DNA of 64,000 nucleotides, from contig NC_134031.1 in NCBI RefSeq assembly GCF_964204645.1, positions 14,929,807 through 14,993,806 on the forward strand, read 5' to 3'. The DNA is from Tubulanus polymorphus (lineage: Eukaryota > Animalia > Nemertea). Shown piece after piece: positions 21,286-24,200 of this stretch; within the stretch, counting starts at the first letter, position 1; each line of letters starts with the position of its first letter. Under the pieces are notes generated by a model. That model did not search any database, was not told the origin of the DNA, and was given only the letters and a program-made list of their open reading frames with translations. Both the position numbers and the translations under genes were made by a program.

Positions 21286-24200
21286 TTAACCCTTCTTCTT
21301 CGACACACCCACAGTTCGGCCGCGCCTACCAGTCGTCTTAGTATGTTGACCACGAACACGCAGACTAGATAAATATAAAATACATTCCGAAATTTAGAAA
21401 CAATTTTTCAAATAAACGAAAGTGAACATGACCGCCCAAAATATGGCGAGGGACTGTCAGTAATGCGACGACTTTTATTAAGAGTTTTGACTGTTTCTAT
21501 ATTTTCAAAAGGACACCATTAATTCCAGCAGAATTCAATGACGGTTTGGTAAGATCTCAGAGTAAAATACAGCCGTGGAATTGGTTTCATAGCGAAATCA
21601 AACGGTAATTCCTGATTTTCATCATAGATCTTCATCCAGTAAAATCGTAAACATGTTCAACCTAAAGAATCTCGACTAAGGTAAGTGAAAAGGTGATGGA
21701 TCTCAGAGTAAAATACAGCCGTGGAACTAGTTTCATATTGAAATCAAACGGTAATTCCTGATTTTCATCATAGATCTTCATCCAGTAAAATCTTAAATAT
21801 TTGATTCTACGCGCAAGAAATATTAACAATAAATCGTAAACTTGGATCTCAGAGTAAAATACAGCCGTGGAATTAGTTTCATATTTCATAATTCAAACGG
21901 TAATTCCTGATTTTCATCACTGATCGACGTAAAAATCTTAACGATTAAAATATTCGCTCATATTTTTTCGGGTAATGGACAAAAACAGATCTCAGAATAA
22001 AATACAGCCGTGGAATTGGTTTCATGTTGAAATCAAACGGTAATTCCTGATTTTCATCACAGATCTGATCAGTCGTGGTCAAAAGATCGTCTTCCTTACC
22101 CCCAGTAATGACGAAGGCCTCTGTGAGCGCGGATCTTCTTCATACGTTCTAAATCTTCACGCAGCTTGTTGTCTAAAGCGTTGGACATCACCTGGCTGAA
22201 TTTACCGTCCTTGATGTCCTTCTGTCTGTTGAGGAACCAATCGGGAATCTTGTACTGACGAGGGTTCGACATAATCGTCAACACGCGTTCGACCTACGGA
22301 AATAGAAGAAACAGCTTCAAATACCGCGAACGAGGACAACAAATTAAAAGCATCAAATGAGAATTAAAATGTTTTAGAGCACAAAAACTTCTCGGTCCGG
22401 TGCTAGGACTCGAAATAACAAGTTCAACGAAATCAAGATCTCAGAGTAAAATACAGCCGTGGAACTAGTTTCATATTGAAATCAAACGGTAATTCCTGAT
22501 TCTCATCACAGATCTTGATTCGATATTAAATCTTAAATATTTTCAACCTAAAGAATATTGTTAAACGTAAGGTGGATCTCAGAGTAAAATACAGCCGTGG
22601 AATTTGTTTCATAGTGAAATCAAACGGTAATTCCTGATTTTCATCACTGATCTTCATTCGATATAAAATCTTAAATATTTTCAACCTAAAGAATGTTGAC
22701 AAAGGTGGATCTCAGAGTAAAATACAGCCGTGGAATTGGTTTCATGTCAAAATAAAACGGTAATCCCTGATTTTCTTCTCAGATCAACGTAAAAAATATA
22801 AATCCTTATTCGGGTTAGCAAAGTTTTTAATTCGGGTAACAGAATAATACAGATCTCAGAGTAAAATACAGCCGTGGAACTAGTTTCATATTGAAATCAA
22901 ACGGTAATTCCTGATTTTCATCACTGATCTGACTTGACGCGACTACCTTATCTCGGTGTCACCTTATGTAGCAGGCTTAGTTTTGACCGCAATTTGAGAT
23001 AAAAAATCGTAGTTTCTCAAAATGAACTATTAATCATTCTGATTCTGCGAGTATTACGATCGATTATACTTGTAACTGATCTCTTAGAAATTATAAAAGT
23101 TCAGAAACTACTCTTAAATAGTAATTGTAGTCAGGACTGTGTGTGGAACTGGATCCTCGCTACCCTAAGGCTAAGGTAAGAGAGAGAATGATCAGAGAGA
23201 GAGAGAGAGAGAGAGAGAGAGAGTTAAGAGGAAGAGAATGATACCGACCTCATCATCGCTAAGTTCACCAGCTCGTTTCGATAAATCAATATCAGCTTTT
23301 TTCAACACGACGTTAGCGTAACGCCGTCCAATACCCTGAAACAAAGCAGCACCACGATCTGTTTAACGACTCTAACTCATTCACACAAACGAGAACATTG
23401 ATCGAAGAGTGGAGGTATCTGTCCGGGGTCATCCTTATTACCGAGATGACGTATTTTACCGAGATGAAATTAAATATAACATATTTATCTATTCCTTATC
23501 GATTTTAACACTTGAAATCATATTATATCAGTAATAAATACCCTTCTAGATTCATATTTTACATATTTTTTTATTTAAAAAAATTTTGACTTCAAATACG
23601 TAAACTCGGTTAGGAATAAAATTTCATTGAATTTGATTGATTGACGATCTCATCTCGGTAAAGTTAAAAGTTATTTTTCTTCAAAAATTTCCGACAAAAT
23701 ATGTAAAATATGACTCCAACAGACATTTATTATTGATATAATATGATTTCAATGGTTAAAATCTATATGGAATAAATAAATATGTTATATTTAATTTCAT
23801 CTCGGTAAAATACATCATCTCGGTAATAAGGATGACCGATCTGTCCGGACTTGGAGGGGATAGAGCAGGGAGAGAAGTCTTACTTTGATGGCGGTCATCG
23901 CGAACATGATCTTTCTTCGTCCATCGATATTCGTGTTCATCACACGAAGAATGTGTTGAAACTTCTCAGGTATAACAAGCGCCTAAAAATAACAACATGA
24001 AATCAGAATCACCAGATAATTCCACCAGTTCGTTCTAACACAAGGAAGACCACATCGTCATTCTCTTCATTCAATGACTCAAGACTTCAAGTCAAGAGTG
24101 GAATATTTCCATTTCTTGCAATTTCAATATTTCTTATCGAATGGCGCAAAATAAATCGAGTACTGTGATAGTGGAATCTGAATTACAACCTAAAACTTCG

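What the first reader, a model, noticed from the sequence alone, without database searches (positions are those of the whole stretch)
21553..22929. Polycistronic intronic array of eight box C/D snoRNAs (4+4) in two RPS18 introns, targeting the 18S decoding-centre loop
Seen: eight ~78-nt copies on the RPS18 sense strand, each with a GATC terminal stem, C box RTGATGA, D' TTGA and D CTGA (copy 7 is degenerate). They are spaced ~55-70 nt apart, four in intron 3 and four in intron 4. The D' guide GGAAUUACCG is complementary to the universal 18S helix-18 sequence CGGUAAUUCC. Established: the D+5 rule places the methylation on the U after the G530-equivalent (yeast Um578/snR77, human Um627/SNORD65). 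Animal intronic snoRNAs are usually one per intron and released by debranching and trimming; polycistronic intronic clusters are mainly described in plants. Inference: several intact copies per intron require an extra separation step in this animal, or a dosage amplification.
Basis: partly seen in the sequence, partly recalled or inferred. Interest (0 to 1): 0.85.

Follow-up and report, generated by a model that had tools for sequence, protein, structure and literature searches.

The report
Intronic snoRNA arrays in RPS18
Two neighbouring introns of a ribosomal-protein gene (RPS18) each carry four tandem copies of a small guide RNA predicted to methylate one universally conserved uridine in the ribosome's decoding centre; the guide is a known type, but several copies per intron is unusual for an animal and recurs elsewhere in this genome.

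Summary
Eight ~80-nt units lie on the minus strand, sense to RPS18/uS13. Four are in intron 3 (22294-23248) and four in intron 4 (21365-22099). Spliced contigs of an RNA run prove both introns.

- **Anatomy:** seven units have all box C/D hallmarks. The second in transcription order has a broken C box and D' box.
- **Target:** the D' guide pairs 11 bp with this genome's own 18S. That places the 2'-O-methyl on U647, equivalent to human Um627 (SNORD65) and yeast Um578 (snR77).
- **Family:** Rfam finds only sub-threshold hits, but they are to the right clan (snoR77Y, 31-37 bits against a cut-off of 52, E down to 7e-5).
- **Selection:** intact bodies are 93% identical while their flanks sit at 50-58%, near random.
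- **Uniqueness:** these are the only credible guides for this site in the 268-Mb assembly.
- **Processing:** spacers are AU-rich and unstructured, with no RNase III-type hairpins. The RNA run holds multi-unit contigs over the intron-4 array at about 1/1000 of exon depth. Nothing shows mature 80-nt RNAs.

The scan noted similar arrays elsewhere in this genome. I verified one: RPL8 has at least 10 guide units in two adjacent introns. I file this as a new member of known kinds (SNORD65-type guide, intronic snoRNA cluster). Separate release of each copy remains inferred.

The parts
22848..22930 (-). c1, first unit of intron 3; intact box C/D snoRNA
   Evidence: Rfam snoR77Y 34.5 bits, E 3e-4. Boxes and stem read.
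22704..22787 (-). c2, degenerate unit (C box TGAGAAGA, D' TTTTA, guide GGGAUUACCG); likely pseudogene
   Evidence: It is 86-90% identical to the others and has no Rfam hit.
22571..22653 (-). c3, intact unit
   Evidence: Rfam 31.0 bits.
22433..22515 (-). c4, intact unit, last of intron 3, 139 nt from the 3' splice site; 9-bp extended terminal stem
   Evidence: Rfam 34.1 bits.
21984..22066 (-). c5, intact unit, first of intron 4, 33 nt from the 5' splice site; one change in the D-guide region
   Evidence: Rfam 36.7 bits.
21841..21927 (-). c6, intact unit with a 3-nt longer D'-C' linker
   Evidence: Rfam 26.9 bits, E 0.028.
21695..21777 (-). c7, intact unit
   Evidence: Rfam 31.3 bits.
21549..21631 (-). 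c8, intact unit, last of intron 4, 184 nt from the 3' splice site
   Evidence: Rfam 37.0 bits, E 7e-5.
22294..23248 (-). RPS18 intron 3 (955 nt, GT-AG)
   Evidence: Loose ends of RNA-run X2 contigs join 23249 to 22293.
21365..22099 (-). RPS18 intron 4 (735 nt, GT-AG)
   Evidence: Loose ends of RNA-run X2 contigs join 22100 to 21364.
22100..22293 (-). RPS18 exon 4
   Evidence: Translation. Homologues carry PF00416 Ribosomal_S13. X2 depth is 20,000-66,000.
23249..23335 (-). RPS18 exon 3
21286..21364 (-). RPS18 exon 5, coding part up to the stop codon; the 3' UTR runs on below
23884..23982 (-). RPS18 exon 2. Exon 1, ending in ATG at 24428-24430, is inferred from sequence only.
   Evidence: The X2 loose end at 23335 joins to 23884. 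Sequence read.

Best explanation
The eight units are tandemly duplicated paralogues, seven intact and one decayed, of the ancient SNORD65 / snR77 / snoR77Y box C/D guide. They sit in sense orientation in the last two introns of the highly expressed RPS18 gene and are the genome's only genes for this guide. They are transcribed as part of the RPS18 pre-mRNA. Each unit would assemble a box C/D snoRNP on its C/D kink-turn and terminal stem. Its D' antisense element (11 bp) would then pair with 18S 643-653 and direct 2'-O-methylation of U647 in the helix-18 (530) loop of the decoding centre. With four units in one intron, trimming from the two ends of the debranched intron can free only the outer ends. 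Release of every copy therefore needs cuts in the 50-63-nt AU-rich, unstructured spacers, followed by exonucleolytic trimming, as in plant polycistronic snoRNA precursors. Shown here: the anatomy, the host-gene splicing, the complementarity to the genome's own 18S, the conservation pattern, the uniqueness in the genome, and the presence of multi-unit intron-4 RNA. Inferred: snoRNP assembly, spacer cleavage, accumulation of each copy, and the methylation itself.
For: - **Repeat structure and boxes:**
- **Family:** Rfam's best hits for 7 of 8 units are to snoR77Y (clan CL00057), full length, E 7e-5 to 0.03. That clan holds SNORD65 and snR77, with targets Um627, Um578 and Um580.
- **Target:** the genome's own 18S carries the target. 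The fifth nucleotide upstream of D' pairs with U647, the U after CGG, which corresponds to human U627.
- **Conservation:** intact bodies are 92.7% identical on average. The 50-nt flanks are 58% (upstream) and 50% (downstream), against 49% for shuffled sequence. All boxes and the 10-nt antisense core are invariant in the seven intact copies; variation sits in the D'-C' linker, three nt after C' and the purine before the C box. The copy with a broken C box has drifted furthest.
- **Uniqueness:** there are no other copies or credible alternative guides in 268 Mb.
- **Splicing and RNA:** host splicing is proven, and RNA contigs spanning c5 to c8 with their spacers are present at about 20x against 20,000-120,000x on the exons.
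- **Second case in the genome:** RPL8 has at least 10 sense units of three families in two adjacent introns, each with 11-15 nt perfect rRNA complementarity abutting a CUGA box.
Against: - No unit reaches an Rfam gathering score.
- The D' box is UUGA and C' is weak.
- The second (D) guide has no convincing rRNA target.
- No small-RNA data exist, so no mature ~80-nt species, no per-copy expression and no methylation have been seen.
- The RNA run shows nothing over intron 3. Over intron 4 it shows only multi-unit contigs, which could be pre-mRNA or an uncut product.
- High identity of the bodies could partly reflect gene conversion rather than selection.
Confidence: 0.75

Rival explanations
1. 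The arrays are not cut into single snoRNAs. After splicing and debranching, exonucleases stop at the outermost snoRNPs. Each intron then yields one snoRNA-capped multi-unit RNA, like human sno-lncRNAs. That RNA either acts as a string of snoRNPs or is a by-product.
For: In human cells, two snoRNAs in one intron give sno-lncRNAs by exactly this route. RNA-run X2 holds contigs from inside c5 to the start of c8, spacers included (21617-22056), but none over the 184-nt 3' tail of intron 4. The spacers have no predicted RNase III-type hairpins.
Against: Contigs cannot show RNA ends or absence. Depth is only about 1/1000 of the exons and fits ordinary pre-mRNA or intermediates. Seven copies kept intact by selection, and arrays of different guides in RPL8 introns, are easier to explain if every unit matures. 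Plants process similar unstructured spacers.
Confidence: 0.15
2. Some units are transcribed on their own from promoters in the spacers, not released from the host intron.
For: A TATTTAAG motif lies about 18-24 nt upstream of c3, c4, c7 and c8. An earlier unverified note reports a self-contained snRNA-type promoter for U3 in this genome.
Against: The first unit of each intron (c1, c5) has no such motif, and c5 starts 33 nt after the splice donor. The motif occurs in spacers that are simply related by duplication (70-90% identical). There is no consistent oligo-T or 3' box after the units. The RNA contigs run across units and spacers.
Confidence: 0.05
3. The units are a young tandem repeat of a snoRNA-derived sequence. 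At most one copy is functional, and the similarity reflects recent duplication or gene conversion, not function.
For: Spacers of c3 and c4 are 90% identical, so some duplication is recent. One copy is already a pseudogene.
Against: Most flanks have decayed to random similarity while the bodies stay at 88-97%. Changes in the bodies avoid every box and the antisense core. The two SNPs seen inside the arrays fall in a spacer and in the pseudogene. No other gene for this conserved guide exists in the genome.
Confidence: 0.05

Closest known systems
SNORD65 (HBII-135, RF00571) / yeast snR77 (RF01181) / Arabidopsis snoR77Y (RF01178), Rfam clan CL00057
   Same: It is a box C/D guide whose D' antisense element pairs with the universal 18S helix-18 sequence and selects the U after the G530-equivalent (Um627, Um578, Um580). 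The guide core GGAAUUACCG, followed by one nucleotide and then the D' box, matches the snoR77Y consensus column for column.
   Different: It scores 31-37 bits against a gathering score of 52. D' is UUGA, not CUGA. The 3' half is unrelated. It is present as 7+1 tandem copies in RPS18 introns, whereas the fetched RPS18 loci of other organisms hold none.
Plant intronic and polycistronic snoRNA clusters (rice intronic clusters; Arabidopsis and maize polycistronic pre-snoRNAs), as cited
   Same: Several snoRNAs lie in one intron or transcript, separated by short U/A-rich spacers without strong structure. Release must involve spacer cleavage plus trimming.
   Different: This is an animal genome. The array is homologous (one guide repeated), and it is split over two adjacent introns of a ribosomal-protein gene.
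Drosophila intronic H/ACA snoRNA clusters
   Same: This is the animal precedent for several snoRNAs in one intron.
   Different: Those are H/ACA. Drosophila, Bombyx and vertebrate C/D snoRNAs are reported as one per intron.
Human sno-lncRNAs (two snoRNAs in one intron)
   Same: There is more than one snoRNA per intron. RNA covering units plus spacers, but not the intron tail, is what such a product would look like.
   Different: There are four units per intron, and no evidence here for a stable capped-by-snoRNP product.
SNORD115/SNORD116 tandem arrays
   Same: Both show local tandem amplification of one C/D snoRNA by cis-recombination, with pseudogenes and conversion among copies.
   Different: Those units each carry their own exon-intron pair in a non-coding host and are orphan guides. 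Here the host is a coding RP gene, several units share an intron, and the target is a canonical rRNA site.

Membership tests
Box C/D methylation-guide snoRNA | C box RUGAUGA near the 5' end and D box CUGA near the 3' end, brought together by a terminal stem | tested here: met
   Seven of eight units meet this, with stems of 4-9 bp. c2 fails on the C box.
Box C/D methylation-guide snoRNA | An antisense element of at least 10 nt ending one nucleotide before a D or D' box, with the target nucleotide opposite the fifth position | tested here: met
   There are 11 bp (10 Watson-Crick plus one G-U) with the genome's own 18S 643-653. The fifth position pairs with U647.
Box C/D methylation-guide snoRNA | Accumulates as a ~70-100-nt RNA bound by fibrillarin, Nop56, Nop58 and Snu13 | not testable with these tools
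   Only contigs of one RNA run were available.
SNORD65 / snR77 / snoR77Y clan (CL00057) | Guides methylation of the U after the G530-equivalent in 18S helix 18 | tested here: met
   Predicted U647 corresponds to human U627. The alignment of positions was checked.
SNORD65 / snR77 / snoR77Y clan (CL00057) | Reaches the Rfam gathering score of a clan member | tested here: not met
   There are no hits at gathering. The best is snoR77Y at 37.0 bits against 52, E 7e-5, full-length alignment.
Intronic snoRNA cluster | Two or more snoRNA genes inside one intron, sense to the host | tested here: met
   Four units lie in each of two introns whose junctions are proven by spliced RNA contigs.
Intronic snoRNA cluster | Individual snoRNAs are released from the common intron | not testable with these tools
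   No small-RNA reads are available. Multi-unit RNA is present for intron 4 only.
sno-lncRNA | A stable RNA ending in a snoRNA at both ends, with the inter-snoRNA sequence retained | tested here: inconclusive
   X2 contigs cover 21617-22056 but not 21365-21548. Contigs cannot define ends.

The most novel reading that the evidence does not exclude
I verified RPS18 and RPL8 here; PSMD3, IPO5 and PRRC2 are noted by others. If so, it must have a splicing-coupled endonucleolytic release pathway of the plant type, acting on unstructured AU-rich spacers. No such pathway is described for animal C/D snoRNAs. The sole source of the decoding-centre Um guide would depend on that pathway.
Probability: 0.5. 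Interest if true: 0.6.

Novelty: new member of a known kind. Interest (0 to 1): 0.45.

Why it matters
The guide itself is ordinary. It is the orthologue of one of the few methylation guides traceable to the last eukaryotic common ancestor, and it acts on the decoding centre.

The packaging is what is worth noting. In the animals studied so far, C/D snoRNAs follow a one-per-intron rule that fits release by debranching and end-trimming alone. Here several units share an intron, in at least two ribosomal-protein genes of the same genome. Either spacers are cut by an as yet unnamed activity, or multi-snoRNP RNAs are made.

This gives a concrete, testable system for asking how polycistronic snoRNA precursors are resolved in an animal. 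The variable D'-C' linkers provide natural copy-specific tags for that test.

Tried and rejected
- **Rfam at gathering threshold:** no hit in the window. Introns 1 and 2 and the promoter region have no RNA-family hit at E <= 0.1.
- **Target of the D guide:**
  - An 18-nt pattern with up to 3 mismatches gave chance-level counts across the genome.
  - In rRNA the best candidate is 28S 285-295, with 8 Watson-Crick plus 3 G-U pairs and a G-U at the methylation position. I rejected it as unconvincing.
- **Accessory pairing:** CGGCUGU in the D-guide region is complementary to 18S GCAGCCG directly 5' of the D' duplex. A shuffle test gave p about 0.08, and other rRNA sites score better, so I kept this only as a weak idea.
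- **RNase III-type hairpins in spacers:** none. Fold z-scores are -0.3 to +1.1.
- **Alternative guides for the same site:** the four other pattern hits in the genome lack D'/D boxes and stems.
- **RPS18 introns of other species:**
  - Exon 4 alone was searched as a protein, by reference. The spliced, joined RPS18 model was deliberately not built or searched.
  - Eight loci from seven look-ups, including Lottia gigantea, hold no such snoRNA.
  - One look-up returned no record and one gave no DNA.
  - None of these loci is a known close relative, so they say little about conservation.
- **Run X4:** it carries the same species label and is possibly RNA, but it matched only 30-50 nt of exon 4 at 90-95% identity. 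It was uninformative.
- **Failed call:** the whole-genome search with the SSU rRNA model failed. It was replaced by a pattern search.
- **Other C/D-grammar hits in the window:** 38538-38622 (+) and 32807-32861 (-) have no perfect rRNA complementarity of 10 nt or more.

Full report
**What is there.** The stretch 21549-22930 holds eight copies of a ~80-nt unit. Read on the minus strand, each intact unit runs as follows:
- a GATC stem arm;
- a C box (G/A)UGAUGA;
- a 17-nt stretch containing GGAAUUACCG, then one U and a D' box UUGA;
- an 8-11-nt variable linker and a C'-like UGAAAC;
- a 23-nt stretch, a D box CUGA, and the second GATC stem arm.

In several copies the stem extends into the flanks, to 5-9 bp. 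A plain box C/D grammar finds the seven intact units and only two other places in the 64-kb window.

**Host gene.** The units are sense to a five-exon RPS18/uS13 gene on the minus strand. Exon translations are, and homologues of exon 4 carry PF00416.
- Contigs of run X2 behave as RNA. Depth is 20,000-120,000 on exons and 0-50 on introns, and loose ends join 23249 to 22293 and 22100 to 21364.
- Intron 3 is therefore 22294-23248 and intron 4 is 21365-22099, both GT-AG. Four units lie in each.
- Exon 2 (23884-23982) is also joined by a loose end.
- Exon 1, which ends with the ATG at 24428-24430 behind a pyrimidine-rich stretch, is my reading of the sequence only.
- I did not build or search the joined spliced protein. 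Only exon 4 was searched, by reference.

**What family.** Nothing in the window reaches an Rfam gathering score. With E-value reporting, seven units give full-length matches to snoR77Y (RF01178), at 27-37 bits against a cut-off of 52 and E 7e-5 to 0.03. This is the best family for six of the seven; for c6 SNORD113 scores marginally higher (27.0 against 26.9 bits). The guide, the one-nucleotide spacer and the D' box align column for column.

That family belongs to clan CL00057 with human HBII-135/SNORD65 and yeast snR77. Their targets are Um580 (Arabidopsis), Um627 (human) and Um578 (yeast), in helix 18 of the decoding-centre A region. A 2026 preprint again names SNORD65 as the guide for human U627.

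**Target in this genome.**
- The rDNA lies in arrays on contigs 12 and 16. One unit (L024) holds an 18S of 2012 nt, a 5.8S and a 28S of 4228 nt.
- The D' element pairs with 18S 643-653, by 10 Watson-Crick pairs plus one G-U.
- The fifth nucleotide upstream of D' faces U647, the U after CGG. Counting from the G617-U627 helix described, this is the equivalent of human U627.
- The next-best rRNA site (18S 148) needs three G-U pairs and two mismatches.

**Are they under selection?**
- The seven intact bodies are 88-97% identical, mean 92.7%.
- The 50 nt upstream average 58%. A related subset (c3, c4, c7, c8) reaches 70-90%.
- The 50 nt downstream average 50%, which equals shuffled sequence at 49 +/- 4%.
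- Within the bodies, all four boxes, the stem and the antisense core never vary. Changes sit in the linker, in three nucleotides after C', and at the position before the C box, where only purines occur.
- The copy with a broken C box is the most diverged.
- The two SNPs seen inside the arrays in the sequencing runs fall in a spacer (21805) and in the pseudogene (22743).
- Gene conversion may add to the similarity, but the pattern is that of constraint on functional elements.
- Spacer types run in the same order in both introns: one 'TTACCCGAA' type, then two 'TTCTTTAGGTTGA' types. This suggests, without proving, that a four-unit block was copied from one intron to the other.

**Only source of this guide.** BLAST of one unit against the whole 268-Mb assembly finds just these eight. 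A pattern of C box plus guide finds eleven places, against zero for the control. Seven are these units, and the other four have no D'/D box or stem.

**The second guide.** The 20 nt before the D box are nearly invariant among copies, yet I found no convincing target.
- Genome-wide counts equal the control.
- The best rRNA match (28S 285-295) has a G-U at the would-be methylated position.
- A 7-bp complementarity to the 18S segment directly 5' of the D' duplex is suggestive of accessory pairing, but it is not significant (p about 0.08).
- I leave this element unexplained.

**How the copies could be released.** With four snoRNPs on one intron, trimming from the ends of the debranched intron frees only the outer ends. 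Inner copies need spacer cuts. The spacers are 50-67 nt, 22-34% G+C, and no more structured than shuffles (z -0.3 to +1.1). So there is no sign of RNase III-type hairpins, and the arrangement resembles plant polycistronic precursors.

The one RNA data set shows contigs from inside c5 to the start of c8, spacers included (21617-22056), at about 20-26x. It shows none over the 184-nt 3' tail of intron 4 and none over intron 3. This shows that multi-unit intron-4 RNA exists. It would fit an end-trimmed intermediate or a sno-lncRNA-like product. Contigs cannot show ends, levels or absence, so it decides nothing. Runs X1 and X3 look like DNA and cover the arrays in pieces, with no evidence of misassembly.

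**Not peculiar to RPS18.** Other first-stage notes on this genome list arrays in RPL8, PSMD3, IPO5 and PRRC2. I tested RPL8.
- Between two coding exons on contig 9 lie six sense units: two of one family and four of another.
- The next intron holds four more: one of a third family and three of the second.
- Each unit has 11-15 nt of perfect complementarity to 18S or 28S, ending at or one nucleotide before a CUGA box.
- Four U14 copies and two snoR38-like units also cluster within 2.6 kb on contig 6. I did not resolve their introns.

The multi-unit intron is therefore a habit of this genome, for both repeated and mixed guides.

**Other species.** Fragments of RPS18 exon 4 from other organisms were found, and eight loci were fetched, among them Lottia gigantea. 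None carries this guide near RPS18. Their relationship to this genome is unknown or distant, so this shows only that RPS18 is not a universal host.

An earlier follow-up names the species as the nemertean Tubulanus polymorphus. I could not verify this. Published flow-cytometry sizes of 313-358 Mb are compatible with a 268-Mb assembly. I found no paper on nemertean snoRNAs.

**Comparison with what is known.**
- Reviews and surveys state that animal snoRNAs predominantly follow one per intron.
- Drosophila H/ACA genes form intronic clusters, while Drosophila and Bombyx C/D genes do not.
- Plants use clusters.
- Two snoRNAs in one human intron give sno-lncRNAs.

The guide is thus a new member of a known, ancient family. 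The arrangement is a new animal instance of a known organisation, the intronic cluster, here for C/D guides and as homologous arrays.

**Verdict.** What remains open is whether every copy matures and how. I rate interest as moderate (0.45). The finding is not surprising in kind. It points to an undescribed processing need in an animal, and to a genome in which that need can be tested.

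Noticed in passing
window 23427-23837 (RPS18 intron 2): A foldback element with 113-nt terminal inverted repeats, 94% complementary and 185 nt apart. It looks like a MITE-type insertion.
   Followed up: partly
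window 23103-23231 (intron 3): A (GA)n microsatellite lies at 23186-23231. Contigs of runs X1 and X3 diverge from the window at 23103 and 23135 with the same foreign sequence, which suggests a structural allele.
   Followed up: no
window about 25640-26000 and beyond: A tandem repeat of roughly 60-nt units (GAGTGGAAATATTTCTCTCTGATCCTCAGTT...) lies in the neighbouring plus-strand gene region.
   Followed up: no
window 24428-24540: The inferred first exon of RPS18 (minus strand) and an ATG-containing first exon of a plus-strand gene (about 24536) lie roughly 100 nt apart. This is probably a bidirectional promoter.
   Followed up: no
L037 = G000:C9:14990000-14996000, units at 1842-3613: RPL8 carries at least 10 sense box C/D units of three families in two adjacent introns. 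Their guides are perfectly complementary to 18S 832-846, 28S 2750-2762 and 28S 2311-2321.
   Followed up: yes
G000:C6:6097066-6099693 (L025-L028): Four U14 (SNORD14) copies at 50-57 bits and two snoR38-like units lie within 2.6 kb on one strand. The host gene and introns were not resolved.
   Followed up: partly
G000:C1:1147705-1147733: A lone 18S-like stretch outside the rDNA arrays has a G-to-A change inside the snoRNA target (CGATAATTCC). It is probably an rDNA fragment or pseudogene.
   Followed up: no
L024 (G000:C12:6990000-6999900): The 18S is 2012 nt and the 28S is 4228 nt, both longer than the Rfam eukaryotic models (1831 and 3401 positions), so expansion segments are sizeable. The rDNA unit is about 13.7 kb.
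   Followed up: no
window 38538-38622 (+) and 32807-32861 (-): Two further sequences fit a simple box C/D grammar but have no perfect complementarity to rRNA of 10 nt or more. They may be chance hits or orphan guides.
   Followed up: partly
run X4 on window 22099-22149: A 2015 run with the same species label matches RPS18 exon 4 at only 90-95% identity. The label may cover more than one species or a distant population.
   Followed up: no
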